Shown one piece after another: positions 32,985-58,507 of a stretch of DNA of 64,000 bases. Positions within the stretch are counted from its first letter, which is position 1; each line of letters opens with the position of its first letter. The stretch lies in the IMG/VR virus record IMGVR_UViG_3300003322_000571, positions 124,001 to 188,000 of that record, one strand, 5' to 3'. A program made the translations under genes and the position numbers. The notes under the pieces were generated by a model that saw only the letters and a list, made by a program, of their open reading frames with translations, was not told the DNA's origin and did no database searches.

Positions 32985-33034
32985 CCGTTGACAAACAATC
33001 AGCTTGGTGGGATACTAAGCTCATTGTTCAACGG
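32985..33034 (+). promoter_or_regulatory. Hairpin promoter reaching the RBS
   Basis: TTGACA-17-GATACT; about 20-bp interrupted stem. Confidence 0.85.
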
Positions 33035-33042
33035 AGTACATC

Positions 33043-33336
33043 ATGTACGCATTCCTCTGCATCAATCCCGATCCCGCCAAGGACGGTGTTGCGATCCACC
33101 TGAGCGATGTCGCCTCGGTTGTTGCTTTCGAGCGCCTGTGGGAACGCATGAGCGACAAGATCCAGGACGAGTACAACTACGATCTGCCGGTCTTCGTCAA
33201 GGAAAGCGACGGCGAAACGCCGGTCGTCAACGTCAAGCCTGCGCAGTTCAAGCGCCTGTACATCGACAGCGTCGTGACGATGACTTTCGCTGGTTTCATC
33301 CAAGAAATCAACAAGTACATCGCCAGCCAAGAATGA
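33043..33336 (+). CDS. Hypothetical protein
   Basis: GGAG RBS. Confidence 0.75.
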   Translation: MYAFLCINPDPAKDGVAIHLSDVASVVAFERLWERMSDKIQDEYNYDLPVFVKESDGETPVVNVKPAQFKRLYIDSVVTMTFAGFIQEINKYIASQE

Positions 33337-33340
33337 CCAG

Positions 33341-33385
33341 TTGATCTTGGATCCGTTTGGTCAGATACTAGACGGATCTAATCAA
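33341..33385 (+). promoter_or_regulatory. Hairpin promoter class B
   Basis: TTGATC-17-GATACT; 15-bp stem, 3 G-T pairs. Confidence 0.85.
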
Positions 33386-33394
33386 GGAGTCAAC

Positions 33395-33700
33395 ATGTCC
33401 CGAATCGCTTTAGCTCACGGCTACATTGAGCAGCTGGTGGCAGGTGCTGAGATCGTGAGCACTCGCGAGACCGATCACGCTGTCGACTGCATGGTCGTGC
33501 ACCCGAAGCGAAAGATCGACCCGACCAGCTTTGCCCGCGCTGCGAAGAAGTACAGCCTGATCGTTGGTTGCACACCGAGTGCGAGCAACCGCAACAAGCT
33601 GATCGTCGCCTACATCACCGTGGCCGACCGCTCTGCCGAGCTGTGCGTCAAGGGCACGAATGAGGGCCCTGTGCACGTCGAAGTGCGCTTTAGGGGTTGA
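33395..33700 (+). CDS. Hypothetical protein
   Basis: AAGGAG RBS. Confidence 0.75.
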   Translation: MSRIALAHGYIEQLVAGAEIVSTRETDHAVDCMVVHPKRKIDPTSFARAAKKYSLIVGCTPSASNRNKLIVAYITVADRSAELCVKGTNEGPVHVEVRFRG

Positions 33701-33732
33701 CCTCAACTGCGTTCGGTGGGATACTGGACGCA
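33697..33732 (+). promoter_or_regulatory. Hairpin promoter class B
   Basis: TTGACC-17-GATACT; 10-bp stem, 2 G-T pairs. Confidence 0.8.
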
Positions 33733-33752
33733 TCCAATCAAAGGAGGCCATC

Positions 33753-33995
33753 ATGGTCAAGGTGATTCAAGTCGAAAGCGGTGTCGTTCGTCAGATGGAG
33801 TTCGAGCAGTTCAACAAGAGCACGATCCTTAGCCTGGTCAACGACGACTCGGACAACGTGTTCGAAGACAAGCACATCCATGTCGTCGAGCAGCCCGGCA
33901 TTGTCGCCTGTTCCGTTCTCCATGACAACGGCCTGGCGCTGGTGACGTTCATCGGTGACACCGCATCGTGGCAGGTCGGCCAGTTGACCGAGTGA
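33753..33995 (+). CDS. Hypothetical protein
   Basis: AAGGAGG RBS. Confidence 0.75.
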   Translation: MVKVIQVESGVVRQMEFEQFNKSTILSLVNDDSDNVFEDKHIHVVEQPGIVACSVLHDNGLALVTFIGDTASWQVGQLTE

Positions 33996-34019
33996 GCGGT
34001 TGGGAGTATCATACTCCCA
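33984..34019 (+). promoter_or_regulatory. Hairpin promoter class A
   Basis: TTGACC-17-TATCAT. Confidence 0.85.
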
Positions 34020-34038
34020 TCACTTCAAGGACCTCATC

Positions 34039-34251
34039 ATGAGTCTACCGCACATTGGCGTCGGAATGGACGTCTGCTTCCGCAGTAAGGTGTTCACTGC
34101 ACCTTACACGCCGCACTTTGACGCGTACAAGGGACACAAGTTCACCGTCGTTGCGATCCATCCTGGCGAACACGTTGCGCTCAAGTGTACGTCTGATCCA
34201 TCGCTGACCGTCAATGGACACGTTCACGCAGACGAGTTGAAGCGGCTGTGA
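34039..34251 (+). CDS. Small SH3/KOW-like hypothetical protein
   Basis: Beta-rich, VGMDV.F...FTVVAI. Confidence 0.65.
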   Translation: MSLPHIGVGMDVCFRSKVFTAPYTPHFDAYKGHKFTVVAIHPGEHVALKCTSDPSLTVNGHVHADELKRL

Positions 34252-34255
34252 CCTG

Positions 34256-34291
34256 TTGTCTTAGTAAGCGTTTGGGAGTACCATACTCCCA
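34256..34291 (+). promoter_or_regulatory. Hairpin promoter class A
   Basis: TTGTCT-17-TACCAT. Confidence 0.8.
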
Positions 34292-34309
34292 TCACTTCAA
34301 GGAGCCGAC

Positions 34310-34522
34310 ATGTTCTTCACGATGACGCCCGAACAAGAAGCAACGTTCAACCGAGTGTGCGAACGAGCTCGCCAGGCATCGCACGACGACTCGTGCACAC
34401 AGCACGTCAACATGCGTGTCCATCTTCGCGGGAACGAGATCCATGCGGAGTTCCTCGTCTCCGACTGGTACGACAGCGACTGCACAGTCCGTTCGTACGA
34501 CGACGGGCGGCTGAAGGACTGA
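34310..34522 (+). CDS. Small hypothetical protein
   Basis: AAGGAG RBS. Confidence 0.75.
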   Translation: MFFTMTPEQEATFNRVCERARQASHDDSCTQHVNMRVHLRGNEIHAEFLVSDWYDSDCTVRSYDDGRLKD

Positions 34523-34599
34523 GCGAAGAGGGCAGATGCCCTCTTGATCTGAGTGTTGTTCTAGGGGACAATACTCACATCATTTACGCTTACGGAATC

Positions 34600-34836
34600 A
34601 TGACCCTCGTTGTCGAAAATGTCAACGCGCTGATGACAGCGCCCGTCGAAGAAACGCAGATCGAACTGCACAGCGTCACTCTGACACTGCGTCGCACAAA
34701 CGGCCACAGCTTCTACCTGCAGGGGAAGATCGATGGCCGCATCGTTCATGTCCGAGACCGCAACACGCACGTTGCAACGTTCAGCCGCAATGAGCTCGTC
34801 CAGCGGCTGCTCGACGGCAATTACGAAATCGGTTGA
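34600..34836 (+). CDS. Small hypothetical protein
   Basis: Cassette ORF. Confidence 0.7.
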   Translation: MTLVVENVNALMTAPVEETQIELHSVTLTLRRTNGHSFYLQGKIDGRIVHVRDRNTHVATFSRNELVQRLLDGNYEIG

Positions 34837-34870
34837 CATCGCCGGTGATAGGTGGGATACTCACTTATCA
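34833..34870 (+). promoter_or_regulatory. Hairpin promoter
   Basis: TTGACA-17-GATACT; TGATAGGTGGG/CTCACTTATCA. Confidence 0.8.
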
Positions 34871-34885
34871 ATAGGGAGAGCAGGC

Positions 34886-35116
34886 ATGCGCAACTTTCTG
34901 TTCCGTATCGGCGATGCAGAGATGAAAAACGGCAAGTGGGCGGCGGTGATCGATTCGTATGCGACCCGCCCCAACGGTGAAGTGTCGCACAAGTCGTCGC
35001 GGATCACTTCCGCAGCGATCTTTGAGTCGGAGGTCGCTGCAATCGAGGGCGCTGATCGTGCTCTCGTCCACCTGGAAGCGACTGGTGAGTTCCCCAACCT
35101 TTGTGAGCCTTTCTGA
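34886..35116 (+). CDS. Small hypothetical protein
   Basis: GGGAGAG RBS. Confidence 0.7.
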   Translation: MRNFLFRIGDAEMKNGKWAAVIDSYATRPNGEVSHKSSRITSAAIFESEVAAIEGADRALVHLEATGEFPNLCEPF

Positions 35117-35391
35117 TGGACATCATTATCACCCAGCAGATCGCCACGCACAACGGCTGGACGGTCCGAATCAACCGCAACGCCGCTGGTCACTGGACGC
35201 TGCTGCGCAATGCGTCCCATCATCCGATGATTCCGCCGTTGACACAACAGCTGATCCAACGTGACGGGATGACGATGTGGGTCGGCATCATCGGTGAAGA
35301 AAAGAAGGCCGGCGACATCGTTGTCGTGGTCAGCTCGGAAGTGCTTGAGGACATCATCAAGCAGACGTGCGCCACTCCTCCCTCTCGTTGA
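35116..35391 (+). CDS. Hypothetical protein
   Basis: TGATG coupling. Confidence 0.65.
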   Translation: MDIIITQQIATHNGWTVRINRNAAGHWTLLRNASHHPMIPPLTQQLIQRDGMTMWVGIIGEEKKAGDIVVVVSSEVLEDIIKQTCATPPSR

Positions 35392-35429
35392 CCTTACGTG
35401 CAACTTGGTATACAATTACCACATTGCAC
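35388..35429 (+). promoter_or_regulatory. Hairpin promoter
   Basis: TTGACC-17-TACAAT; GTGCAA/TTGCAC plus TGGTA/TACCA. Confidence 0.75.
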
Positions 35430-35443
35430 AATAGGAGCCAACA

Positions 35444-35650
35444 ATGGCACACGTACTACCGGAACAACTGATTGATGAGCTGAAGAAGTCCGCTGCTCGT
35501 CAAACCGCTCGAGAGCAAGCAGGTGACTACCTGTTCATCGAGCGTGCCCACTTCGACAGCGACTTCGAAGCGACGTACGCAGGCGGCGTTGACGATGGTC
35601 ATACGATCGCAGCGCGCTCTGTGTTGACTGCGCTCGGCATCCAGTGGTGA
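35444..35650 (+). CDS. Small hypothetical protein
   Basis: AGGAG RBS. Confidence 0.7.
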   Translation: MAHVLPEQLIDELKKSAARQTAREQAGDYLFIERAHFDSDFEATYAGGVDDGHTIAARSVLTALGIQW

Positions 35651-35657
35651 AGTCAAC

Positions 35658-35927
35658 ATGATCGTCGTCATCCATGAAGACCAGTGCGAGCACCTCGCTG
35701 CACTGTCACACTACAACCACAACTACTACAAGCTGCCATTCAAGGTCAACGACTGCGACACCGTGTTCGCGTCGTACGACGGTGCTGACAACTTCAACGG
35801 CCACGAGCTCGGCAATATCGTCGACGGCAAGTTCGAGGTCAAATTCTACCTCCATACGTACGACAAAGATGATAGCACATTCATCTTCGACAGCAAAGAG
35901 CTGAGCGAGACGAACAAGTGGACGTGA
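35658..35927 (+). CDS. Hypothetical protein
   Basis: Operonic ORF. Confidence 0.7.
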   Translation: MIVVIHEDQCEHLAALSHYNHNYYKLPFKVNDCDTVFASYDGADNFNGHELGNIVDGKFEVKFYLHTYDKDDSTFIFDSKELSETNKWT

Positions 35928-35931
35928 CCTG

Positions 35932-35972
35932 TTGACATTGGTCAATTGTTACCTTATAGTTGTTGTAACAAT
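35932..35972 (+). promoter_or_regulatory. Hairpin promoter
   Basis: TTGACA-17-TATAGT; ATTGTTAC/GTAACAAT. Confidence 0.8.
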
Positions 35973-35987
35973 AAAAGGGGTAACTAA

Positions 35988-36287
35988 ATGGCAGTCGATT
36001 TTCTCAATCAGCCGCTGGAAGTCAACGCAGTCGTCATCATGACGCTGCCGAAGTATGCTGACATCTGCGTCGGTGTTGTCAAGAAGGTGACGCCGCAGCG
36101 AGTGCGTGTGGTCTACCGAGACCATAACGACTACGCCAGTGAGATTGTCGTCGAGCACGGCACGGTGATGGTGACTACGCACGAGGTCGCGCTCAAGCGG
36201 GCACGGTTCATTCGCCTGAAGGCGGTTGAAGCTGATCTGCTCAACCGTGCAGACATGAACGACGGCGATCTTCCGGCAGGGCGCTGA
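35988..36287 (+). CDS. Hypothetical protein
   Basis: Cassette ORF. Confidence 0.75.
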   Translation: MAVDFLNQPLEVNAVVIMTLPKYADICVGVVKKVTPQRVRVVYRDHNDYASEIVVEHGTVMVTTHEVALKRARFIRLKAVEADLLNRADMNDGDLPAGR

Positions 36288-36294
36288 TGCTCCG

Positions 36295-36348
36295 TTGATC
36301 TCGACCTCACACGGTGGGATAGTACTCCCATCATGTGAGGGAGATCAA
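36295..36348 (+). promoter_or_regulatory. Hairpin promoter sequestering the RBS
   Basis: TTGATC-17-GATAGT; stem runs from the -35 to the A of ATG 36348. Confidence 0.85.
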
Positions 36349-36677
36349 TGATGACTGTCGCAGCACCGTTCCATCCAGCAAAGCACGTCTACCAAAAAGA
36401 CGACCAAGTTGCCGTTGAGTATCAATACGGCCGGTGGTACTTTGGCACGATCCTATGGATCGAACAAGGCTTTGGCAACCTCAAGTTCGCTGTCGTCCGT
36501 CCCGACGATGATCGGTACATCGCGACGTTCGGTAGCAGCCGTGACATGAGCAACGGCTACAAGGGTTACATCTGCAACGACCCGCTGCTCAACCACATCG
36601 TCCCTCTCGAGCACTATGTGTGGGCGAGTGAGCTGACTGCACAGCAGCGGATGGAAGCGTACAAGCTGATTGCTTAA
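36348..36677 (+). CDS. Hypothetical protein
   Basis: GAGGGAG RBS. Confidence 0.75.
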   Translation: MMTVAAPFHPAKHVYQKDDQVAVEYQYGRWYFGTILWIEQGFGNLKFAVVRPDDDRYIATFGSSRDMSNGYKGYICNDPLLNHIVPLEHYVWASELTAQQRMEAYKLIA

Positions 36678-36762
36678 TTGTCAACATGTGGGCTATCAAC
36701 TGCCCACTGTTGACTTTCGTCGTGGGCGACGTTATGATCGAGTCATTGTACAGGAGGTAGAG

Positions 36763-37008
36763 ATGTCTCTCAAAGACGAGATCGAAGCAAAGCGCAAGGA
36801 GATTGCGGCGCTCGAGCAATCGATTGGCGATCGCAAGCGTGAGCTGACCGCACTGGAGAACAGCCGCGTCAAGTGTGCACATACGTTCTCCGCTGCCGTC
36901 CGTGGCTACGAACACGAAGGTGGTCACTGCACGAAGTGCGGGATCAATCAGCTCCACGCCGACACGCTTGCGTGGCAATATCGCACTGGCCGCCCGTTGA
37001 CGGCTTAA
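36763..37008 (+). CDS. Coiled-coil plus Cys/His motif protein
   Basis: GGAGG RBS; CAH...HCTKCG. Confidence 0.7.
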   Translation: MSLKDEIEAKRKEIAALEQSIGDRKRELTALENSRVKCAHTFSAAVRGYEHEGGHCTKCGINQLHADTLAWQYRTGRPLTA

Positions 37009-37028
37009 CATTTTTAAAGGACAATACT

Positions 37029-37460
37029 ATGTCGGTTCGACAACAAGCGATCGCTGACGTCAAGCTGTGCGAGCGAGTGACGGCGCGCGACGGTGAAGAC
37101 TCTGTCCGTCACTACATGGCGGCGTTCAAGAAGACGTTCGCTCCGCTCGTCAAGGCGGCGCTCGGCACGTCGATCGAGCATGACGACATCGAATCGCTCG
37201 AGATCGACAGCGCAGGTGACCTGTACATCCGCACGTCGTGGGTCAGCATGGGATGTGCTGACGGCAACACGTACATCCTCCCCGCTCACATCATCGACGC
37301 TGCCGATCCGTTGCATGCTGCGACTGTACATCATCTGAAGAAGCAAATCAACGATGCGCAGTCGTACGTCGCACACAAAGAGGCAGAACTGGAACGTGCC
37401 GAACGGTCGCTGGAAGAGCTGAAGAACAGCCTCGCACTTGTTCTCGAACAGAACAGTTGA
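37029..37460 (+). CDS. Family C paralogue
   Basis: LEID..GDLYI...W...G...Y.LP..I. Confidence 0.75.
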   Translation: MSVRQQAIADVKLCERVTARDGEDSVRHYMAAFKKTFAPLVKAALGTSIEHDDIESLEIDSAGDLYIRTSWVSMGCADGNTYILPAHIIDAADPLHAATVHHLKKQINDAQSYVAHKEAELERAERSLEELKNSLALVLEQNS

Positions 37461-37499
37461 CATCTAGTTGAGTGTGGTGTATGCTGCACTCAACTAGAT
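37457..37499 (+). promoter_or_regulatory. Hairpin promoter
   Basis: TTGACA-17-TATGCT; 16-bp stem with 2 G-T pairs. Confidence 0.85.
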
Positions 37500-37514
37500 C
37501 AATAGGGGCCTATC

Positions 37515-37775
37515 ATGGCATCGACTGCGGAGTACAAGTGCAAGAACGACGGCTGTGGCAAGATGTTCACAGCTCGTACTGCCGACCGCAAACGAGGATG
37601 GGCTCTGTTCTGCAGCAAGCGGTGCAAGGCGGTTGAGCAGGAGAAGCGGACAGGGCAGCACGCCGCGTATCAAGCTCGGCGCGATGCCGCTCACGCAAGC
37701 ACGTTCGATAGTGACTGGGAAGTCGCTATGGCTGACAATGAGGCGGGCTGGGACGGGCATAAGAACGCGTTCTGA
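37515..37775 (+). CDS. Small C4 zinc-finger-like protein
   Basis: CKNDGCGK.F...RGWALFCSKRC. Confidence 0.75.
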   Translation: MASTAEYKCKNDGCGKMFTARTADRKRGWALFCSKRCKAVEQEKRTGQHAAYQARRDAAHASTFDSDWEVAMADNEAGWDGHKNAF

Positions 37776-37832
37776 TCATTGACCTAAGTAAGGGTCAACG
37801 GTAACGTGTGCAGTTCTCAATAGGAGCTGCAT

Positions 37833-38051
37833 ATGTCTGAGTTTACCAGGTACACGATCGATTTCGCAACGACAAAGTTCACAACTGTCGCCATCTGTCT
37901 GACGGTTGTCTTGATGATGGCGTTCGTGTACGATATCTGCACTGCGAATGCAATCACGCAGTGTAAAGTCGTTGCTGCGACAACTCGCGTCTACGGTGAA
38001 GAGCAGCAATTGCGGACCGTTGAACAAATCCGTAAGTTGTGCGACCGTTGA
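37833..38051 (+). CDS. Small membrane-anchored protein
   Basis: TM plus C...EQI...C. Confidence 0.65.
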   Translation: MSEFTRYTIDFATTKFTTVAICLTVVLMMAFVYDICTANAITQCKVVAATTRVYGEEQQLRTVEQIRKLCDR

Positions 38052-38104
38052 TATCGCCTATAGGGTTAACCTAAAGTGTACAACATTACGGGTAAGGAGT
38101 CAAC

Positions 38105-38263
38105 ATGGAAATGAAGTGGTATTGCATTGCTGTCGCTGTAGTGATCTCCGTTGTCAGCATCAGTGAAGCTGTTGACAAGTGGCAGCACAATCAGTGCAAG
38201 ATCGAGCTCGCCAAGAGCACAACGAAGACCGCTGAACAGATTGAAGCTGTATGCGGCAAGTGA
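38105..38263 (+). CDS. Small membrane-anchored protein (52 aa)
   Basis: AAGGAG RBS; TM plus QCK...EQIEAVC. Confidence 0.65.
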   Translation: MEMKWYCIAVAVVISVVSISEAVDKWQHNQCKIELAKSTTKTAEQIEAVCGK

Positions 38264-38782: not shown

Positions 38783-38784
38783 CA

Positions 38785-39093: not shown

Positions 39094-39094
39094 T

Positions 39095-41688: not shown

Positions 41689-41725
41689 TTGACTTGGTTG
41701 AATAAATGGGTATTATTGTACCCAT
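41689..41725 (+). promoter_or_regulatory. Hairpin promoter
   Basis: TTGACT-16-TATTAT; ATGGGTA/TACCCAT. Confidence 0.7.
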
Positions 41726-43183: not shown

Positions 43184-43795
43184 GTGTTGACATTGGTTCA
43201 ACACTTGCTACTTACCCTTATGAACGTATCCAAAGCAACAACTGTTAGCCGCCTTCGCAAACTAGCGGACACCCTGTCAGACGTCGATCCAAAGTACTTC
43301 AACATTGATTCATGGTTGAAGATCAACGGAAGTCATCACCTGCACAGCAGTGATGAGGCGTTCCTTGGTCTAAACAGGAATGATATTGACGTTACCGAGG
43401 TCGTCAATAAGGCAAAGAAAAACGAATGTGGCGCCGCTGCTTGCGCGCTTGGTTGGGCATGTTCGATTCCATCGTTCAAGGAGGCGGGATTGATTATGCG
43501 TGCTCAGGCTGATTCCGATTCGTGGAACACGGTGAAACCTTCGTTGGTTGTTGGTGGCCGGGTAATCGCAACGGATTATGACGCTGGGGCGAGGTTCTTC
43601 GGTGTTAATGATGCAACGTCTGAATACCTGTTCGACCCCGATTCGTACGTAACTGAACCGTCCGCAAAACAAGTTGCGCGCCGGATCCGTGCGGTCGCGA
43701 ATAAAATCGAACAAGGTTTTGTGATTCGCGACGTTAACTATACATACGACTGCTTCAGCCGTGTGCGTGTCAACTACGTCAAACGAAAAGGTTAA
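43184..43795 (+). CDS. Tandem paralogue family D, copy 1
   Basis: RL.KLAD.L...FN...W...CG.AACA.GWA..IP.F...FFG...LF.P..Y...VA.RIR. Confidence 0.85.
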   Translation: MLTLVQHLLLTLMNVSKATTVSRLRKLADTLSDVDPKYFNIDSWLKINGSHHLHSSDEAFLGLNRNDIDVTEVVNKAKKNECGAAACALGWACSIPSFKEAGLIMRAQADSDSWNTVKPSLVVGGRVIATDYDAGARFFGVNDATSEYLFDPDSYVTEPSAKQVARRIRAVANKIEQGFVIRDVNYTYDCFSRVRVNYVKRKG

Positions 43796-43797
43796 TT

Positions 43798-44406
43798 ATG
43801 ACAACAATCGCTACAGCAATTCGCCGCCTAAACAAACTGGCGGACTTCCTGGACACAGTTCCACCTAAGCAATTCAACATCAATCGTTGGTTTGAAACGG
43901 ACGTTGAAGCTGATCACAAACTTCACTTGTACAAGAATAGCAAGAACGTTCCGGTCAAGCAATACATCGAGCGGAGGCACAAGGAGGACAATGAATGCGG
44001 AGCGGCTGCATGTGCTTTTGGCTGGGCTTGTACGATTCCGTCGTTCAAGAAGGCTGGTCTCAAGATGGTCGGCATGATTGGTGAATTTGAGCCACGGTAC
44101 ACGGCAAAAGATGGCCAGGTGTTCCACAATTTCTCCGCCGCTGAGCAATTCTTCGGTATCAACTACGAAACCGCTGAATACCTGTTTGATCCGACGTGCT
44201 ATATTGCACCTCCGTCTGCCAAGGGCGTTGCTCGCCGTATTCGAAGCGTCGTTGCTCAGCTTGAGAAGGGCAATGAGCTGACGTACTATTCGTCGCGTTA
44301 CGGTCACGATACACAGCGGCGCGGTCGCATTGTGACGAAGTACACGAAGATTCAAACATCTAACAAGTCGAAGGAAGACGTCGATGGCATCAATTGGTAC
44401 TGGTAA
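43798..44406 (+). CDS. Tandem paralogue family D, copy 2
   Basis: Same motif set. Confidence 0.85.
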   Translation: MTTIATAIRRLNKLADFLDTVPPKQFNINRWFETDVEADHKLHLYKNSKNVPVKQYIERRHKEDNECGAAACAFGWACTIPSFKKAGLKMVGMIGEFEPRYTAKDGQVFHNFSAAEQFFGINYETAEYLFDPTCYIAPPSAKGVARRIRSVVAQLEKGNELTYYSSRYGHDTQRRGRIVTKYTKIQTSNKSKEDVDGINWYW

Positions 44407-44986
44407 TAAGCGACTGCTGAAGCTGGCGGATTTTCTTCAGACTGTTCCCGAGGAAAGCTTCAACTTGGACAATTGGTTGGAGCACCAAGAAGGGTACAAG
44501 CTGACTGCCGTACAAGAGAAGTTCCGTGAACAGCATCGAACGAATGCACAAAATGTGATTGATAAGAAGGGTGTTGACCTTCTTAATATCGACGTTGAAA
44601 GCCTAACGACACCTCAATGCGGGTTCGCAGCTTGTGCAGTTGGGTGGGCATGTGCAATTCCAGCGTTCCGCAAGGCTGGTCTCCGCATGCGGACTACACA
44701 TCAAACGTCACTCAACTTTTACCCAACACTTGTTGTCAAGGAAGAACATCCTTCAGAATGGCCTCAAGGATTTGATGCTGTTAATCAATTCTTCGGTCTT
44801 TCAAACGATGCGTCTGAGTACATGTTCAATCCGTGTGGTTATATCAACCCACCGTCAGCCAAGCAAGTTGCCAAACGTATTCGTGCGTTCGTTGCAAAGC
44901 GAGAACAAGGATACGACTTGTTCAACTTTGAGGTAGAAACAAACCGCGTCCGTGCGAAGTATTCCAAGAGCAAAGGTTCGAAATGA
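44384..44986 (+). CDS. Tandem paralogue family D, copy 3
   Basis: Same motif set. Confidence 0.85.
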   Translation: MASIGTGNKRLLKLADFLQTVPEESFNLDNWLEHQEGYKLTAVQEKFREQHRTNAQNVIDKKGVDLLNIDVESLTTPQCGFAACAVGWACAIPAFRKAGLRMRTTHQTSLNFYPTLVVKEEHPSEWPQGFDAVNQFFGLSNDASEYMFNPCGYINPPSAKQVAKRIRAFVAKREQGYDLFNFEVETNRVRAKYSKSKGSK

Positions 44987-45462
44987 GTGAACGCCAACTA
45001 GATGTAAGTAACCGCCGTCTACTTAAGCTGGCCGAGCACCTTGATACGATTCCCGTAGAAGCGTTCAACATCCACCACTGGGTTAGTCTCAACGAAAAAG
45101 ATACCGTCTGGGCGCCTGAAGTTAAAAAACTGGAACAGTACGATAGTATTTCTGAAGGCGTACTGGCCAACGTCGAATGTGGATTTGCAGCTTGTGCTGT
45201 TGGTCATGCTTCAAGCATCAAGGAATTCCAGCAGGAAGGTTTCCGTATGCTGCATGATGAGGAATTCGGTCCTATCTATCCGTCGTACAGAGGTCGACAT
45301 AGTTTTGCCGCTGTCAATCTGTTCTTTGGTTTGGATGATGAAGAAGCACAGATGCTGTTTCAATCAACTGGCTACGGGACTAGAAATGTAACACCGTATG
45401 ATGTTGCGAAACAGATTCGCACGTTTGTCAATACACGGACAGAATATAACGGCGAGTATTGA
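44983..45462 (+). CDS. Tandem paralogue family D, copy 4
   Basis: Same motif set. Confidence 0.85.
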   Translation: MSERQLDVSNRRLLKLAEHLDTIPVEAFNIHHWVSLNEKDTVWAPEVKKLEQYDSISEGVLANVECGFAACAVGHASSIKEFQQEGFRMLHDEEFGPIYPSYRGRHSFAAVNLFFGLDDEEAQMLFQSTGYGTRNVTPYDVAKQIRTFVNTRTEYNGEY

Positions 45463-45469: not shown

Positions 45470-45520
45470 TTGTGAATGAAATAAGGTGAGAGTATCATGA
45501 CTCTCACCTTTTCTTTTATT
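45470..45520 (+). promoter_or_regulatory. Promoter embedded in a terminator-like hairpin
   Basis: TTGTGA-17-TATCAT; AAGGTGAGAGT/ACTCTCACCTT followed by TTCTTTTATT. Confidence 0.75.
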
Positions 45521-51087: not shown

Positions 51088-51153
51088 GGTCTGAGTGTTG
51101 ACACCCATGGCTGACGTTCCTATAGTGGAGTTGTTCATTTAAGGAGAACAGTC

Positions 51154-51279
51154 ATGGAATACGTAACGTTGATTCTGTTGGTGATCGTCGGTATTGGTGG
51201 TGGTTTGGCTTTCCGTCAACATCGCCGCACTACACGGCAAGAGCCGTTCAAGACGCAGCTGCACGACAGCCGCAAGTAA
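51154..51279 (+). CDS. Single-TM peptide (41 aa)
   Basis: AAGGAG RBS, own promoter. Confidence 0.6.
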   Translation: MEYVTLILLVIVGIGGGLAFRQHRRTTRQEPFKTQLHDSRK

Positions 51280-52353: not shown

Positions 52354-52385
52354 CTTGCCACTATAATTGCGGTAAGTTAAATCTC

Positions 52386-52691: not shown

Positions 52692-52699
52692 GGTAGCTT

Positions 52700-54118: not shown

Positions 54119-54369
54119 TGACCCCATTTGATATTGCTGCGATTGAGGGTGACAAGATCCTCAAGATCACCGTCAACAGTGAGCGACACCTGACAATTCA
54201 CGGCGAAAAGTTCACATTTCAGTTGACGAACATGATCGATCAGACTGACAGTGACCAGATTCCGGTCTTCAATGTTCGTACAACTGAAAACCGAAGTGGC
54301 CCTCGACCTCGCGTTAAGGCGCCTGAAAAGTCAGCAACCATTTTTGAGTTCAAGAGGAAAAACGAATGA
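54109..54369 (+). CDS. Hypothetical protein
   Basis: Coupled ORF. Confidence 0.6.
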   Translation: MDVMTPFDIAAIEGDKILKITVNSERHLTIHGEKFTFQLTNMIDQTDSDQIPVFNVRTTENRSGPRPRVKAPEKSATIFEFKRKNE

Positions 54370-54788
54370 CAAAGCCAAAGAATCCTGTGACGATGACTCG
54401 TGATCAGGCGTTCCAGAAGACGATCGACATCATTACGAACGGATTCGATGCAACTGCGATCGCTCAGGCTCTCGCAAAAGCAAATCCTGTGTTGTTCGTT
54501 GAACTGCACGCCAAAACGGTTGCACAATCGACCTTTGTAGCGACCAACTTGTCGGCCGATCATTTCTTCGTGGTTGATCAAATTCGTGACGGTAGTATCG
54601 TTACTGCGATCAAGAAGCTTCGTGAAATGACTGGCTTCGGCCTCAAGCATGCAAAGGACGTTGTCGACCACGTTCGTGGTACTCTCGACCCGACGGCTGA
54701 TGGATCGTCGTACCGTCTAGACGCTGAACAGCAGGCTGTGTACGAACAATTGGTTATCGCTGGTCGTCAACGTTACGCTGCTGCCTAA
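54366..54788 (+). CDS. Protein with ribosomal bL12 C-terminal-like domain
   Basis: IVTAIKKLREMTGFGLKHAKDVVD. Confidence 0.75.
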   Translation: MTKPKNPVTMTRDQAFQKTIDIITNGFDATAIAQALAKANPVLFVELHAKTVAQSTFVATNLSADHFFVVDQIRDGSIVTAIKKLREMTGFGLKHAKDVVDHVRGTLDPTADGSSYRLDAEQQAVYEQLVIAGRQRYAAA

Positions 54789-54796
54789 CTGTTACT

Positions 54797-54804
54797 AATA
54801 AATA
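54797..54804 (+). promoter_or_regulatory. Late promoter candidate (AATAAATA)
   Basis: Upstream of the MKLFE gene. Confidence 0.5.
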
Positions 54805-54835
54805 GTTTCACGCTTAGTATCTGAAGGAGATAAGC

Positions 54836-55192
54836 ATGAAACTATTCGAAATGGCAAAACCAAAGGTTTGCGAAAAGTGCGGTAAGACGATGTCAAAGAA
54901 CCACTACTGGTACAAGGGTGGTTGGAAGTGCAGCGACAAGATGGGGACAAAGCCTCGTAAGCCTAAGGACGGTTCGGAAGCACCGGCTAAGGCAGAGAAG
55001 AAAGAGTCTCCTCCGCAACGCGTCGAGCGTAAGGATGTTCCGGAGACGGATCACACACGTGAGATGAAGAAGAAAATGGCTGCTGCAAACGAAGAAGCAG
55101 CTAAGAAGCGCGATATGGAATTCTACAAGAAAATGGAAAAACAAAAGCGCAAGGACGACGGCGGTATTGCAGACGAGCACAACGAAGATTAA
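54836..55192 (+). CDS. Lys/Glu-rich late protein with CxxC motif
   Basis: MKLFEMAKPKVCEKCG; AAGGAG RBS. Confidence 0.75.
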   Translation: MKLFEMAKPKVCEKCGKTMSKNHYWYKGGWKCSDKMGTKPRKPKDGSEAPAKAEKKESPPQRVERKDVPETDHTREMKKKMAAANEEAAKKRDMEFYKKMEKQKRKDDGGIADEHNED

Positions 55193-55239
55193 TCGTTGAG
55201 TAACCAAAGGGTTAGCTAAGAATATGGCAGCAAGGCAAC

Positions 55240-55662
55240 TTGACTGCCATTTCTTTTATGCTTGACGATTATATGACTAAAGCAGCAAATGCTGCATTTG
55301 AGTCGTTCGTTCAAAGCTTCGACGATTTCCTCGCAGGATCATTTCCCAATCTCTGGATATACGGAGACGACATCATTTCCGTGTATGTTCGCAAAGGGAA
55401 GAGGTTTATTAACGGAGGTTGGTTCACGTGCTTTGACATTGGAACGATCACAATCAATGAACAATACCAAGGCAACGGTATTGGTATAAAGGTGATTGAC
55501 TATTTGCACAGCAATCATCCGTATAGAGCAACGCTAGTTGAGAGTATCCTGAATCAACGTCTATACGACAGATTGAAGAGGGAGCATTGGAATGATGTCC
55601 AAAATAGTGTACCCCCTTCTTTGTTCAAACTGAAGCCGCTGAAACACGGAGAACAACTGTAA
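55240..55662 (+). CDS. GNAT-family acetyltransferase-like protein
   Basis: IGTITINEQYQGNGIG motif A. Confidence 0.65.
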   Translation: MTAISFMLDDYMTKAANAAFESFVQSFDDFLAGSFPNLWIYGDDIISVYVRKGKRFINGGWFTCFDIGTITINEQYQGNGIGIKVIDYLHSNHPYRATLVESILNQRLYDRLKREHWNDVQNSVPPSLFKLKPLKHGEQL

Positions 55663-55663
55663 G

Positions 55664-55714
55664 TTGACCTTTTGTTTACTATGTGATATGCTTCTCCTGA
55701 TTAAATAGGAGAAG
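55664..55714 (+). promoter_or_regulatory. Promoter with RBS-sequestering hairpin
   Basis: TTGACC-17-TATGCT; CTTCTCCT/AGGAGAAG. Confidence 0.75.
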
Positions 55715-55716
55715 TA

Positions 55717-55974
55717 ATGCATATGGTGTATTGGACCGTGTGGTCCGACGGTGAAGCAACAGCGCTTCAAAAAGATTTCGACAACAGCCAGCTTAAGCAG
55801 GCTCTTGATTTCTGCAAATCGCTGCGCAAGCGAATTGACCTTGGCGAACCGCTTGGTTTCGTCACAATGGCAACGGAGGATCCCAACATGGTTGGGAAAA
55901 TGGGCGTAGACTCCATTGTCGATGGTATGTGCCCTGATGGTGTCCCGTACACATGGAAAAAGCGTCGCATCTGA
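55717..55974 (+). CDS. Conserved hypothetical protein
   Basis: FVTMATEDPNMVGKMGVDSI.DG.CPDG..YTWKKRR. Confidence 0.8.
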   Translation: MHMVYWTVWSDGEATALQKDFDNSQLKQALDFCKSLRKRIDLGEPLGFVTMATEDPNMVGKMGVDSIVDGMCPDGVPYTWKKRRI

Positions 55975-56178
55975 TCGAATTCCAACAGAAGGTCGTTGAT
56001 ACGTTGAATCAAGCAACGAACGACCTCGATATTGCTTTCACAGAAGGCTGGAATCCTATTGTCCCGCCGATGCCAATGACGTTTGGTCAAGTCCAATTCT
56101 TAAAATCAGGTACGACGGAAATGATGACGATCCGTCATCCAACGTCATGGTATTATATGTTATACAGATGGAGAACAG

Positions 56179-56523
56179 ATGAAAAGAGTAACGGAGAAGA
56201 CTGACTTCTATTTGTCGAAGTACGAGCTAGAAGGCTCTTTTGATGATGTTGTTGCCAGTATTCGTGCAGTTGAAAAACAAGCACTCGATGCATATCACGA
56301 AATGTGCTACGACCATCTTAATCCGGAGTTTTACTTTGATTGGGAACCTGCAGAAGACGGTGGTGATGTGTTAACGCTGTACGTTAAACGCGACGAACTA
56401 CACCACGAAGCGCTTGTTCGTATTATGGAAGAGCAAGCACGTCAAGCAGATTTCGAGAAGTACGAACAAGAGCTATACTTGAGACTACATGAAAAATACG
56501 GAAAAGTACTCCGTGAACAATGA
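56179..56523 (+). CDS. Hypothetical acidic protein
   Basis: GGAG RBS. Confidence 0.7.
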   Translation: MKRVTEKTDFYLSKYELEGSFDDVVASIRAVEKQALDAYHEMCYDHLNPEFYFDWEPAEDGGDVLTLYVKRDELHHEALVRIMEEQARQADFEKYEQELYLRLHEKYGKVLREQ

Positions 56524-56528
56524 GCAAT

Positions 56529-56553
56529 AAGCCGGTTTGACCGGCTTTTTTTG
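56529..56553 (+). terminator. Intrinsic terminator
   Basis: AAGCCGGT/ACCGGCTT plus T tract. Confidence 0.85.
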
Positions 56554-56606
56554 TTGTTCGGTATTGGGTTCATTGTTACAATGTTGGTTCTTTACAGGAG
56601 TATTCT

Positions 56607-56780
56607 ATGCAAGTGTACGAATCGAATCTTTCAGCTGCTTTGTCAGTCGCAATTGCAGAACGCCGTAAGGTAGAAGCTCAACTTGGATATACGGGCGACT
56701 CAGCGTTTGTTGCTGGTCTCGTACAAGTGCTAGAGGCATTCGAGCGCGGTGAACACATTGAAATCGTTCGAGGAGCCTAA
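56607..56780 (+). CDS. Small hypothetical protein (57 aa)
   Basis: AGGAG RBS; MQVYESNLSAAL... Confidence 0.6.
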   Translation: MQVYESNLSAALSVAIAERRKVEAQLGYTGDSAFVAGLVQVLEAFERGEHIEIVRGA

Positions 56781-56845
56781 TATGACGCTCGACGATCTGT
56801 ATCCACAACGAAAGATTTGCCGTCTCCTGCAACGACCTTCACAAT

Positions 56846-57715
56846 ATGAACAACATCAACGACATTCCTCTTCAAACGACCAGCAACCTACTCAACGCGT
56901 TCCCGTCCAATCTCCAGAAGAGAGATCCGTGGCCACGAAAGGTTCCTGTTGGTATTGAGGTGGAAGTTCCTTGGCGTGGTTATTTTCCGGATTTGTGGGT
57001 AGACGGGTTTCCAAATGTAGATGAAGAAACTCTTGCACGAATCACTGAGGAATGCACTAAGCGTGAGGAAACACTTATTCCTAAGCTGCGTAAAACGCAA
57101 GAATGTGGCGTGAAACGAGGTGCTGACAAGTACTGGGAATTCGCATTCGATCCTGTCACAGATGTTCGTATCACGTGCGACCATGTTGAGATTCTCCGTC
57201 AGCATAATCTGATTCCTGAAGGGCCGCATTCTTTACACATTACGTTTGGTGGCTTGCGAGCTACTCGTGACATGCATTACGTTGCAATGATTCTCGAGTG
57301 TTTTGCTTGTTCTCCTGAGCGAATTTTGTCGGGATTCCATCCAACGAGCGAAGCACAATCTGTTGGGTGGGCTCGTAAGGGATTTGCTGGTCTATTTGAA
57401 AAGACAGGTTCTCATGATCTTTTGCACGGATATCAATACGGTTGTGAGATCCGGCTACTGACCCTACCACAGACAGACGATGAATTGTTCTATCTGCTCG
57501 ACATTGGTCAGTGTTTTGCCGTACTTGCATTGAACAAAGATCCAATGTGGACGAGGATTCGTGATACGTTGAAAATGATTCTGTTGAAGAACGGACTTCC
57601 AGATGAGAACTGGAAGAAGCCACATATTAACCCTGAACTGTGGAAGGATGTTGCTGAAAAGTGGCCTGCAGTTCAAGCCAAGGTTGTAGACTTCATCTCT
57701 GACGTCTACCCTTAA
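56846..57715 (+). CDS. Putative amidoligase (GS/GCS2-fold)
   Basis: VGIEVEV...WEF...HITFG...CEIR pattern. Confidence 0.55.
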   Translation: MNNINDIPLQTTSNLLNAFPSNLQKRDPWPRKVPVGIEVEVPWRGYFPDLWVDGFPNVDEETLARITEECTKREETLIPKLRKTQECGVKRGADKYWEFAFDPVTDVRITCDHVEILRQHNLIPEGPHSLHITFGGLRATRDMHYVAMILECFACSPERILSGFHPTSEAQSVGWARKGFAGLFEKTGSHDLLHGYQYGCEIRLLTLPQTDDELFYLLDIGQCFAVLALNKDPMWTRIRDTLKMILLKNGLPDENWKKPHINPELWKDVAEKWPAVQAKVVDFISDVYP

Positions 57716-57742
57716 TGACTAGCCTATATACTGGAGTAATGG

Positions 57743-58003
57743 ATGGAAACCACCAAGACGGATTTGATTGCCATTGTTGAGAGCGTATGGGGCGTTCAAC
57801 CGATGGAAGTGGTTGAGGAGTTGTTGTTTTCAACGACAGCTTTTCCATTCGCTCCGGTTGAGAAGATTGCAGTCCAGTTGAAAGAGTACTTCGACCGAAG
57901 CGGTGGTAATCCCGGTAAAGCGATCAATCTTGCGTACGAAGATTTTGATAGGGAATGGGAAGAATACAAAGCGAGGGAGAAGGAAAATGAAGAATCGAGT
58001 TAG
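57743..58003 (+). CDS. Hypothetical protein
   Basis: GGAG RBS; LF.TTAFPF. Confidence 0.75.
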   Translation: METTKTDLIAIVESVWGVQPMEVVEELLFSTTAFPFAPVEKIAVQLKEYFDRSGGNPGKAINLAYEDFDREWEEYKAREKENEESS

Positions 58004-58106
58004 GGAAAAGTTTGGATTGGTGTTCGTGATCGCAGTTGTTATTGCGTCGTGTGCAGCCGCATACGTATCAGCCCTGCATTAATTGCCGTATTTGTTTGGG
58101 TGACAA

Positions 58107-58114
58107 TATAAATA
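58107..58114 (+). promoter_or_regulatory. T4 gp55-type late promoter (TATAAATA)
   Basis: Perfect consensus 27 nt upstream of ATG 58142. Confidence 0.65.
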
Positions 58115-58141
58115 TGCCCAACAAATATAGGAACACCAATC

Positions 58142-58444
58142 ATGGAATTTCTGAGGGAACTGCTAAGCGAGAGTAAGAAGGACAAGAATAAAGCTCCTGT
58201 CCTTAAGATGTTGCCAATCAAGTCATTCGTGGCTGGTAATATGGTTACGTCTAATCCAGAAGATGATGAGTGTGAATCTGTGACAGAAGGTAAAGACAAA
58301 GTGAAAGTACCGGTTTCAAAGCCACGCGCCAAGGACATCAACGATGCTCTCGTTCACACGAAGAGTGGTCGCCACTATGATCCAAAGCGTGATTATGTCC
58401 GCGCGAAGGAGAAGTCGCGTAGCCGTAAGGAAATGCAAGACTAA
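58142..58444 (+). CDS. Basic late (possibly virion) protein
   Basis: MEFLRELLSE start; late promoter. Confidence 0.75.
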   Translation: MEFLRELLSESKKDKNKAPVLKMLPIKSFVAGNMVTSNPEDDECESVTEGKDKVKVPVSKPRAKDINDALVHTKSGRHYDPKRDYVRAKEKSRSRKEMQD

Positions 58445-58453
58445 ACCCTTTAG

Positions 58454-58507
58454 TTGAACAACTAAACAACCCTCAGTATAGTGTATGCAAGTACATTACT
58501 GAGGGTT
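58454..58507 (+). promoter_or_regulatory. Promoter with RBS-sequestering hairpin
   Basis: TTGAAC-17-TATAGT; AACCCTCAGTA/TACTGAGGGTT covers the GAGGG RBS. Confidence 0.75.

What the first reader, a model, noticed from the sequence alone, without database searches (positions are those of the whole stretch)
32985..58507. Hairpins that hide the RBS only in read-through transcripts
Seen: at 36295-36348 the stem runs from the -35 (TTGATCTC) to GAGATCAA and the start codon. At 58468-58507 it covers GAGGG, at 55691-55714 AGGAGAAG, and at 32985-33034 it reaches CGGAG. In each case the 5' arm lies upstream of the predicted TSS, so RNA started at the gene's own promoter has a free RBS. Established: T4 uses this logic to silence late genes (e, soc, I-TevI) on early read-through RNA. 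Inference: promoter-specific translation makes each cassette insulated from upstream transcription.
Basis: partly seen in the sequence, partly recalled or inferred. Interest (0 to 1): 0.68.

Follow-up and report, generated by a model that had tools for sequence, protein, structure and literature searches.

The report
Promoter-embedded hairpins in phage gene cassettes
In an uncultivated 350-kb phage, about fifty small genes each carry their own promoter with a built-in hairpin that can form only on RNA arriving from upstream, and in a few of them (three of the four flagged sites) the hairpin also buries the ribosome-binding site; this is a local version of designs already known from T4-type phages, not a new principle.

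Summary
All four hairpins exist at the stated coordinates and are far more stable than shuffles (z -6.1, -4.8, -4.0, -5.7). At 36.3, 55.7 and 58.5 kb the 3' arm holds the SD, and the 5' arm lies inside a sigma70-like promoter, upstream of the predicted start. The modelled cost of freeing the SD is 13-18 kcal/mol on read-through RNA and 0-5 on RNA from the gene's own promoter. At 33.0 kb only two SD bases are paired (6.8 vs 4.7).

The four are the extreme end of a larger feature. Window 13-38 kb holds 46 tandem cassettes, each a promoter, a hairpin, a short leader and an unrelated small gene. In 39 of them the promoter spacer pairs with the stretch between the -10 and +1, with cassette-specific arms (0 of 20000 partner permutations match). 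As a class these hairpins stop short of the SD, so SD masking is not general (p=0.06).

A near-identical soil strain lacks exactly one cassette and swaps another at the leader. The closest known system is the PeSL promoter/stem-loop cassette of T4-type phages. The few masked genes also follow T4 lysozyme-type logic.

No transcript data exist, so function is inferred.

The parts
13162..38132 (+). Array of 46 tandem cassettes. Each has the upstream stop codon, a sigma70-like promoter (consensus cCtGTTGAC-N17-(tgG.g)GATAcT-N6-CATc), an 18-26 nt leader with SD, and a small unrelated ORF. In 39 of 46 the spacer pairs with the stretch between the -10 and +1, leaving the -10 in or beside the loop.
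   Evidence: Promoter-like sites: 40 vs 8.6 expected in 12-30 kb and 51 vs 17.7 in 30-50 kb. Hairpin with own partner -9.11 vs -5.26 kcal/mol with permuted partners, 0 of 20000 permutations as good. The genes are not paralogous.
36293..36350 (+). Three-tier hairpin: 36293-36302 pairs with 36341-36350 (start codon), 36305-36311 with 36335-36341 (SD), and 36313-36319 with 36326-36332. The -35 is at 36295-36300, the -10 at 36318-36323, the predicted start at 36330, and the gene at 36348-36677.
   Evidence: z -6.08. SD opening cost 14.7-17.7 kcal/mol on long RNA vs 3.0-6.0 on short RNA.
58468..58507 (+). The 5' arm 58468-58478 overlaps the start of the -10 (58477-58482; -35 at 58454-58459). An inner stem pairs 58481-86 with 58491-96. 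The 3' arm 58497-58507 holds SD GAGGG. A U-rich tail UUUCCUUU follows, then the ATG at 58514. The predicted start is about 58489. The gene 58514-58942 is a hydrolase-family protein.
   Evidence: z -4.75; phrog_3668, E 4e-33. SD cost 12.6-14.5 vs 3.4 kcal/mol.
55689..55716 (+). An 11-bp hairpin: the 5' arm 55689-55699 overlaps the -10 (55687-55692; -35 at 55664-55669) and the 3' arm 55706-55716 holds SD AGGAG. The ATG is at 55717, the predicted start about 55699, and the gene at 55717-55974.
   Evidence: (z -3.98). SD cost 14.5 vs 0.0 kcal/mol. The upstream stop (55660-62) lies 26 nt before the arm.
32985..33034 (+). Hairpin from CCGTTGA (which includes the -35 at 32988-93) to TCAACGG. The -10 is at 33011-16 and the predicted start at 33023. 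Only G33033 and G33034 of SD GGAG are paired. The gene is at 33043-33336.
   Evidence: z -5.67. SD cost 6.8 vs 4.7 kcal/mol. In the soil strain C32986 is T, which keeps the pair as G-U.
51098..51157 (+). Promoter TTGACA-17-TATAGT (11/12). The spacer stretch 51105-13 pairs with 51149-57 (start codon), and 51117-21 pairs with SD 51142-46. The predicted start is about 51133.
   Evidence: SD cost 6.5 vs 2.7 and AUG cost 7.5 vs 3.2 kcal/mol.
31088..31366 (+). One complete cassette (promoter-hairpin plus the 71-aa ORF 31155-31370) that is absent from a 95-99% identical strain in a soil metagenome. The junction lies in a shared CTGAC that contains the stop codon.
   Evidence: (joint 31087->31367, seen in contigs of two runs of the same soil sample).
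31681..31728 (+). A promoter-hairpin module at which the soil strain's contigs leave the window sequence, between the SD and the ATG, and continue into a different gene.
   Evidence: (loose ends at 31712, seen in contigs of two runs of the same soil sample).
56529..56547 (+). A canonical intrinsic terminator (8-bp GC-rich stem followed by a U tract), given for contrast. Others lie at 52069-89, 22447-69, 15196-221, 17924-45 and 27320-39.
   Evidence: Promoters just downstream of such terminators carry weaker embedded hairpins (median -5.7 vs -12.0 kcal/mol, p=0.048, n=6 vs 40).

Best explanation
The four hairpins belong to a genome-wide family of composite promoter/stem-loop gene cassettes in a 350-kb jumbo phage. 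They work like the PeSL ('promoter-early stem-loop') cassettes of T4-type phages.

Each small gene has its own sigma70-like promoter. The sequence-free parts of that promoter are the 17-nt spacer and the stretch between the -10 and +1. These have evolved to be complementary to each other or, in a minority, to the SD region.

The 5' arm lies upstream of +1, so the hairpin cannot form on RNA started at the cassette's own promoter. It forms only on sense RNA that reads in from an upstream cassette.

Inferred action on that read-through RNA: in most cassettes the hairpin attenuates or ends the upstream message, or protects its 3' end. In a subset (36348, 55717, 58514, 51154, weakly 33043, and about ten more elsewhere in the genome) it also sequesters the SD or AUG, so the downstream gene is translated efficiently only from its own promoter, as with T4 gene e. 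At 58.5 kb and several sites outside the window the same hairpin is followed by a U-rich tract, so it may be terminator and translation mask in one.

The conserved modules also serve as break points for cassette gain, loss and exchange.

Shown here: the structures, their excess over chance, arm covariation, sense-strand bias, the geometry relative to predicted promoters, and the cassette indels. Inferred: the transcription start sites, the existence and fate of read-through RNA, and any effect on termination, stability or translation.
For: - The hairpins are real: z -4 to -6. The promoter-to-ATG segments of the array have mean z -2.56, against -0.65 for other gene upstream regions.
- The arms are cassette-specific and complementary: -9.11 kcal/mol with the own partner vs -5.26 +/- 0.38 with permuted partners, 0 of 20000.
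- The bias points to sense-strand RNA: 61 G-U pairs of 456 in sense folds vs 22 of 395 in antisense folds, and the sense fold is 2 kcal/mol more stable (p=0.0004).
- The promoters are real as a class: 40 vs 8.6 and 51 vs 17.7 expected. They have a fixed 17-nt spacer, an extended -10 TG, a conserved CATC at +1 and an 18-26 nt leader.
- SD masking occurs at specific genes: 13-18 vs 0-6 kcal/mol. It is enriched among promoter-bearing genes (10/111 vs 10/395, p=0.004).
- Composite terminator/promoter/SD hairpins occur elsewhere in the genome.
- Promoters that follow canonical terminators have weaker hairpins.
- A near-identical strain lacks one cassette from stop codon to stop codon and diverges between SD and ATG at another.
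- The cassette genes are unrelated ORFans.
- Literature: PeSL description, stem-loop positions and terminator assay (PMC2839356; PMC4122927); T4 masking (PMC3014915).
Against: - There are no RNA data for this phage, so start sites and read-through are predictions.
- The array hairpins lack a U tract (mean 1.4 T in the next 8 nt), whereas the same genome uses canonical terminators elsewhere. Efficient intrinsic termination at the array hairpins is therefore doubtful.
- Class-wide SD masking is not significant (p=0.059).
- The promoters at 55664 and 58454 match only 9/12, in a region with no overall promoter excess.
- The test on promoters after terminators is small (n=6, p=0.048).
- The distant relative Xoo-sp13 has a similar tandem promoter/ORFan array without embedded hairpins (own -2.44 vs permuted -2.06 kcal/mol). 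The hairpins are therefore not needed for such arrays to work.
- The strain evidence comes from short, 3-5x metagenome contigs.
Confidence: 0.6

Rival explanations
1. Every cassette is translationally insulated: the hairpins exist to hide the RBS on read-through RNA, so each gene is translated only from its own promoter.
For: This holds for 36348, 55717, 58514 and 51154. Strong masking is enriched among promoter-bearing genes. Many -35 boxes (GTTGA) can pair with a TCAAC motif just 5' of the SD.
Against: In the 46-cassette array the conserved hairpin mostly ends near +1, within about 5 nt. The class-wide cost difference is 1.43 vs 0.89 kcal/mol in controls (p=0.059). Pairing of the -35 box with the leader shows no cassette-specific covariation (p=0.34). 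In 12 cassettes the stop codon sits 4 nt before the -35 box, so terminating ribosomes would open such outer stems.
Confidence: 0.15
2. The hairpins are RNA processing or stability elements. They would be 3'-end protectors of the upstream message against exonucleases, or RNase III sites that cut polycistronic RNA into monocistronic units, as in T7 early RNA. Any SD coverage would be incidental.
For: The structure is selected in the sense strand. There is no U tract. Several stems total 20 bp or more: 36348, 37515, 31155, 33043, 33395. A single-stranded A-rich leader follows each hairpin.
Against: Many stems are only 7-10 bp, for example the recurrent GGGAGTA...TACTCCC form, which is too short for RNase III. 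There are no data on ends. This does not explain why SD-covering cases are enriched at promoters.
Confidence: 0.15
3. The inverted repeats act in DNA. They could form cruciforms that make promoter activity depend on supercoiling, or serve as targets of a recombination protein that moves cassettes, as the PeSL authors speculated.
For: The repeats flank the -10 exactly. Cassette indels and swaps occur at the modules. The PeSL discussion raises this possibility.
Against: The stems use many G-U pairs that would be mismatches in DNA, and the antisense strand folds worse. Only 17 of 46 have a perfect Watson-Crick run of 7 bp or more. The arm sequences differ between cassettes, so there is no common protein site.
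Confidence: 0.07
4. Translational coupling. On polycistronic RNA the mask is opened by the ribosome that terminates at the upstream stop codon, so the hairpins tie downstream translation to upstream translation instead of silencing it.
For: The upstream stop ends 1 nt before the 5' arm at 33043, ends 5 nt before it at 36348, and overlaps it at 30825. In 12 cassettes the stop lies 4 nt before the -35 box. A ribosome at a stop codon covers roughly 10 nt beyond it (general knowledge).
Against: At 55717, 58514 and 51154 the arm starts 17-26 nt beyond the stop, out of reach. At 36348 only the basal 4-5 bp would open and the SD tier stays paired.
Confidence: 0.1

Closest known systems
PeSL (promoter-early stem-loop) cassettes of T4-type phages RB49/phi1, PST/T4 and nt-1/KVP40 (Arbiol et al. 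2010, PMC2839356; Comeau et al. 2014, PMC4122927)
   Same: [quoted passage not shown] Both have the SD and ATG at the 3' end of the module. Both are repeated many times in front of unrelated small ORFans in a plastic region. In both, indels and replacements between close relatives have junctions inside the modules, between the -10 and the ATG.
   Different: The host phage here is not a T4-like phage in the strict sense. Its DNA polymerase is about 40% identical to Xanthomonas, Stenotrophomonas and Ralstonia jumbo phages. [quoted passage not shown] The arms are cassette-specific and covarying rather than a conserved polyG/polyC. There is no U tract in the dense array. A subset extends to the SD. 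Terminator activity has not been tested here.
T4 genes e, soc, 49 and I-TevI: translation masked on long early transcripts and relieved on transcripts from a promoter inside the hairpin (review PMC3014915)
   Same: The SD and/or AUG lie in a helix whose 5' strand contains or lies upstream of a promoter, so promoter-proximal transcripts lack the inhibitory strand. This applies to 36348, 55717, 58514 and 51154.
   Different: In T4 the internal promoter is a late one (TATAAATA) and the logic is temporal. Here the internal promoters are sigma70-like, the same class as the upstream ones, and TATAAATA is not enriched. The masked genes here are small ORFans and a hydrolase-family gene, with no known cost of early expression.
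Rho-independent (intrinsic) terminators
   Same: Both are GC-containing hairpins at the end of the upstream gene. The 58.5-kb hairpin and several outside the window (genome positions 99928, 20302, 22428, 313995) are followed by U-rich tracts.
   Different: The hairpins at 33.0, 36.3 and 55.7 kb, and 39 array hairpins, have no U tract. The genome has separate canonical terminators.
T7 early-region RNase III sites and phage N4 hairpin promoters (from my own knowledge, not tested here)
   Same: T7 has intercistronic hairpins on polycistronic early RNA. N4 has promoters that depend on a hairpin.
   Different: Most stems here are too short for RNase III. N4 hairpins have 3-nt loops, are read by a phage RNA polymerase, and lack sigma70 boxes.

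Membership tests
PeSL cassettes (T4-type phages) | Sigma70-like early promoter in the intergenic space | tested here: met
   Scan tool: 40 vs 8.6 and 51 vs 17.7 expected. The consensus has a 17-nt spacer, an extended -10 and CATC at +1.
PeSL cassettes (T4-type phages) | Stable stem-loop within or overlapping the promoter | tested here: met
   39 of 46 cassettes have 5 bp or more and -4 kcal/mol or lower. Own vs permuted partner: 0 of 20000.
PeSL cassettes (T4-type phages) | SD and start codon at the 3' end of the module | tested here: met
   Leaders of 18-26 nt with GGAG-type SD.
PeSL cassettes (T4-type phages) | [quoted passage not shown] | tested here: not met
   AT fraction 0.43 in the 25 nt before the -35 box. 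That stretch is the end of the upstream ORF, with the stop codon 4 nt before the -35 box.
PeSL cassettes (T4-type phages) | Clustered in a plastic region in front of ORFans | tested here: met
   46 cassettes in 25 kb. There are no paralog families among them, and the sampled proteins had at most one marginal PHROG match and no Pfam match.
PeSL cassettes (T4-type phages) | Indels or replacements between close relatives with junctions in the modules | tested here: met
   Joint 31087->31367 (one cassette, CTGAC microhomology) and divergence at 31712 between SD and ATG, seen in contigs of runs from one soil sample. The contigs have low depth.
PeSL cassettes (T4-type phages) | The stem-loop acts as a terminator or attenuator | not testable with these tools
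   No RNA runs exist. By sequence alone there is no U tract.
PeSL cassettes (T4-type phages) | The host genome is a T4-like myovirus | tested here: inconclusive
   RIIA and a T4-family DNA polymerase are present. The nearest relatives are XacN1/Xoo-sp13-type jumbo phages at about 40% amino-acid identity.
T4 e/soc/49/I-TevI-type promoter-dependent translational masking | SD and/or AUG sequestered in a helix on the long transcript | tested here: met
   Met for 36348, 55717, 58514 and 51154. Partial for 33043.
T4 e/soc/49/I-TevI-type promoter-dependent translational masking | A promoter positioned so that its transcripts lack the 5' strand | tested here: met
   Met by prediction only: the -10 plus 7 nt rule, robust to +/-3 nt. 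No start site has been mapped.
T4 e/soc/49/I-TevI-type promoter-dependent translational masking | The internal promoter belongs to a later temporal class than the upstream promoters | tested here: not met
   The internal promoters are sigma70-like, as are their neighbours. TATAAATA occurs 4 times per strand vs about 7 expected.
T4 e/soc/49/I-TevI-type promoter-dependent translational masking | Lower translation from long than from short transcripts | not testable with these tools
   This needs reporter fusions or toeprinting.
Intrinsic terminator | GC-rich stem followed directly by a U tract | tested here: not met
   Not met at 33.0, 36.3 and 55.7 kb or in the array. It is borderline at 58.5 kb (UUUCCUUU), which the scan tool did not list.
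Any curated RNA family (Rfam 15) | Match at the gathering score | tested here: not met
   Only two tRNAs matched in the window.

The most novel reading that the evidence does not exclude
The hairpin is a 'self-erasing' insulator built from the promoter's own free positions (the spacer and the stretch between the -10 and +1). Any RNA arriving from upstream is attenuated and, where the helix reaches the SD, translationally masked. The cassette's own RNA never contains the 5' arm and is immune. Used about fifty times in tandem, this would make each ORFan a fully autonomous, plug-and-play expression unit. That autonomy would explain why whole cassettes are gained, lost and swapped at the modules. 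It would be a general design for phage accessory-gene arrays beyond T4-type phages, and one that this lineage evolved independently, since its distant relative Xoo-sp13 lacks it.
Probability: 0.25. Interest if true: 0.6.

Novelty: new member of a known kind. Interest (0 to 1): 0.4.

Why it matters
If confirmed, PeSL-type regulatory cassettes are not confined to T4-type coliphages and vibriophages. They would also organise the accessory-gene region of an uncultivated jumbo phage from soil and root samples. The covarying, sense-strand-biased arms are clean sequence evidence that read-through RNA is under selection. That makes the old question of what the PeSL stem-loops do testable with a defined set of natural arm variants. 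The question is whether they terminate, stabilise or mask translation. The compact modules, with a terminator or mask that the gene's own promoter cannot see, are also candidate insulator parts for synthetic operons. For genome annotation, they mark cassette boundaries and real start codons of very small genes.

Tried and rejected
**Searches for relatives found nothing useful.**
- Megablast of 8 kb against phages: no match.
- Exact 22-mer of the recurrent palindrome in viral contigs: none.
- The 20-mer in metagenome contigs gave two hits: one is a high-GC bacterial contig and neither shows any cassette context, so both look like chance matches.
- The search for related loci with the 289-aa protein between the two distal sites: none.
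- Homologues of the 58514 hydrolase-family protein exist in many phages but are too distant to compare leaders.

As a result, cross-species covariation could not be done. Within-genome partner permutation was used instead.

**Other negative results.**
- RNA evidence: no RNA run holds the stretch, so no start sites or 3' ends are available.
- Class-wide SD masking is not significant.
- Covariation between the -35 box and the leader: none.
- T4-type late promoter TATAAATA as the internal promoter class: not enriched.
- Rfam: no family.
- Hairpins as a trait of the wider phage family: rejected. The Xoo-sp13 early array lacks them.

**Calls that returned nothing usable.**
- One Pfam call failed on a mis-set coordinate and was not repeated.
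- One paper search failed on a term that was too short.

The large protein searches, structure prediction and complex prediction were not used. The claim does not rest on any protein.

Full report
**What the window is.** The window is bases 124001-188000 of a single 350,089-bp contig.
- The contig encodes RIIA, a T4-family DNA polymerase, an NAD-dependent ligase, tail and head proteins and a head-tail adaptor.
- Its polymerase and adaptor are only 36-40% identical to those of Xanthomonas phages Xoo-sp13 and XacN1 and Stenotrophomonas phages CM1 and RAS14. Ralstonia phage RsoM2USA is further off, at 37% for the polymerase and 30% over half of the adaptor.
- The only run holding nearly all of the DNA is a root metagenome. 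A soil metagenome holds a close strain. No RNA run holds it.
- It is therefore an uncultivated jumbo myophage with no close sequenced relative.

**The observation.** All four hairpins are present.
- RNAs that begin at the predicted start sites show no unusual structure (z +1.05, -0.39, -2.21, -0.45).
- Each site has a sigma70-like promoter with a 17-nt spacer.
- A start 7 nt after the -10 falls 3' of the masking arm.
- The ensemble cost of exposing the SD, read-through RNA vs own-promoter RNA, is 14.7-17.7 vs 3.0-6.0 kcal/mol at 36348. It is 12.6-14.5 vs 3.4 at 58514, 14.5 vs 0.0 at 55717, and 6.8 vs 4.7 at 33043.
- These values are stable to a +/-3 nt shift of the start.
- At 33043 only two SD bases are paired, and the short RNA has a small hairpin of its own over the AUG.
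- A fifth case, 51154, sits behind the best promoter of the 50-64 kb region.

**The larger pattern.**
- I printed the 75 nt before every + strand gene and folded each promoter-to-ATG segment.
- From about 13 to 38 kb almost every small gene has its own promoter. There are 46 cassettes, inside a GC-rich island.
- The consensus is cCtGTTGAC, 17 nt, (tgG.g)GATAcT, 6 nt, CATc. The leader is 18-26 nt and A-rich. In 12 cassettes the upstream stop codon lies 4 nt before the -35 box.
- The scan tool finds 40 promoter-like sites against 8.6 expected in 12-30 kb, and 51 against 17.7 in 30-50 kb.
- In 39 of 46 cassettes the spacer pairs with the stretch between the -10 and +1, so the -10 sits in or next to the loop.
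- A recurrent form is the palindrome GGGAGTAT-N-ATACTCCC, found 8 times against 0 expected.
- The arms differ from cassette to cassette but stay complementary. Each 5' half with its own 3' half folds to -9.11 kcal/mol. With permuted partners the value is -5.26 +/- 0.38, and none of 20000 permutations reaches the observed value.
- Promoter-to-ATG segments have mean z -2.56 (48% below -3). Other gene upstream regions have mean z -0.65 (7% below -3).

**RNA or DNA?**
- Sense-strand folds contain 61 G-U pairs of 456. Antisense folds contain 22 of 395.
- Sense folds are about 2 kcal/mol more stable (p=0.0004).
- Only 17 of 46 cassettes have a perfect Watson-Crick run of 7 bp or more.
- This points to selection on sense RNA. 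The 5' arm precedes +1, so such RNA can only come from an upstream promoter.
- The hairpins are therefore indirect evidence that read-through transcripts exist and matter.

**Is RBS hiding the general function? No.**
- The common hairpin mostly ends near +1, within about 5 nt.
- The long-minus-short SD cost averages 1.43 kcal/mol in the array and 0.89 in 395 genes without a promoter (p=0.059).
- The -35 box (GTTGA) can often pair with a TCAAC just before the SD. This pairing is no better for a cassette's own partner than for swapped partners (p=0.34).
- Strong masking is a tail phenomenon. A difference of 7 kcal/mol or more occurs in 10 of 111 promoter-bearing genes and 10 of 395 others (p=0.004). 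A difference of 9 or more occurs in 6/111 vs 5/395 (p=0.017).
- At least one or two of those 'others' may carry a promoter that my filter missed: a TATAGT -10-like box at genome position 42305 and an A/T-rich one at 20302.
- Outside the window the clearest cases join a long stem to an SD in the 3' arm and a -10 in the 5' arm or loop. In three of them (99928, 22428, 313995) a U tract follows (genome positions 99928, 221144, 204713, 22428, 313995).
- Where a U tract follows, these look like terminators that are also translation masks and that their internal promoter cannot see.

**Terminator or something else?**
- The array hairpins have no U tract (mean 1.4 T in the next 8 nt).
- The phage has ordinary terminators elsewhere.
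- Promoters lying just after such terminators carry weaker embedded hairpins (median -5.7 vs -12.0 kcal/mol, p=0.048, n=6 vs 40). This fits a role on incoming RNA, but the sample is small.
- Attenuation, 3'-end protection and processing cannot be told apart without RNA data.

**Ribosome reach.**
- At 33043 the upstream stop codon ends 1 nt before the arm. At 36348 it ends 5 nt before. At 30825 it overlaps the arm.
- A ribosome at a stop codon covers roughly 10 nt beyond it (general knowledge). It should melt all of the mask at 33043 and the basal part at 36348.
- That would couple downstream translation to upstream translation rather than silence it.
- At 55717, 58514 and 51154 the arm begins 17-26 nt past the stop, out of reach. 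These three are the best candidates for true masking.

**Cassette mobility.**
- Contigs of a soil-metagenome strain are mostly 95-99% identical to the window.
- They skip 31088-31366: one promoter-hairpin plus its 71-aa ORF, from stop codon to stop codon, through a shared CTGAC.
- At 31712 they leave the window sequence between the SD and the ATG and run into a different gene.
- The cassette genes are unrelated to one another and to known families.
- Some modules are identical over 37 nt, for example 31726 and 31974.

**Comparison with what is known.**
- They are clustered before ORFans. They were shown to reduce downstream lacZ like a strong terminator and to mediate cassette exchange, with crossovers between the -10 and the ATG (PMC2839356; PMC4122927).
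- The present array meets these features, with these exceptions: no AT-rich upstream region, no conserved polyG/polyC arms, a different phage lineage, and untested terminator activity.
- The masked subset follows the logic of T4 genes e, soc, 49 and I-TevI (PMC3014915). Here, however, the internal promoter belongs to the same class as the upstream ones.
- The distant relative Xoo-sp13 has a comparable tandem array (25 promoters before 46 small genes in 20 kb) but no embedded hairpins. The hairpins are therefore a lineage-specific addition.

**Verdict.** The feature is a new member of a known kind. Interest is moderate. The sequence evidence for selection on read-through RNA is unusually clean, but the principle is established and function here is inferred.

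Noticed in passing
window 12000-38000: A GC-rich island (0.54-0.58, against 0.45-0.50 elsewhere in the window) coincides with the dense cassette array. Its promoters favour GATACT, GATAGT or TATTAT as the -10, whereas promoters elsewhere favour TATAGT.
   Followed up: partly
window 26861-26889, 27418-27446, 27665-27693, 28021-28049 (- strand): Four high-scoring sigma70-like sites lie antisense inside + strand cassette genes. Two show the full array consensus cGTTGAC-N17-GATACT. None has a hairpin, SD or ORF behind it. They may be antisense promoters.
   Followed up: partly
window 60100-60467: tRNA-Ala (60171-60243) and tRNA-Pro (60393-60467) sit behind a TTGATC-17-TATAGT promoter at 60100-60128, inside the small-gene run.
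   Followed up: partly
window 36333-36338: The predicted leader of gene 36348 contains a start-stop mini-ORF (ATG TGA) just 5' of the SD.
   Followed up: no
G000:C1 99850-99930, 221144 (-), 204713 (-), 22428, 313995 (-), 20302, 42305: Outside the window there are long hairpins with the SD in the 3' arm, in several cases followed by a U tract, and most with a sigma70-like promoter inside. One lies before the NAD-ligase gene and one just upstream of the rIIA region.
   Followed up: partly
window 43184-45462: Four tandem paralogous genes (203, 202, 200 and 159 aa) without promoters between them. A second trio is 37029, 39468 and 40043.
   Followed up: no
window 58514-58942: The gene behind the 58.5-kb hairpin belongs to phrog_3668 ('hydrolase', E 4e-33). 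Its homologues in Rheinheimera phages lie next to a tRNA nucleotidyltransferase.
   Followed up: partly
L012:1060-1140: A high-GC bacterial metagenome contig carries the identical 20-mer GGGAGTATGATACTCCCATC in an intergenic position before a GTG-start ORF. This is either chance or a similar promoter in a possible host lineage.
   Followed up: no
window 45483-45510 and 41706-41725: Two hairpins have a -10-like hexamer in the loop and, unlike the array hairpins, a U tract after the stem. They are terminator-plus-promoter modules of the nt-1/KVP40 PeSL style.
   Followed up: partly
L016 (Xoo-sp13 1-20000, - strand); XacN1 5-20 kb and 324-338 kb: The distant relatives hold arrays of near-consensus GTTGACA-N16/17-TATAAT promoters. 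In Xoo-sp13, the one examined, these have C/A-rich leaders before small genes. In XacN1 the array is duplicated in the terminal repeat.
   Followed up: partly
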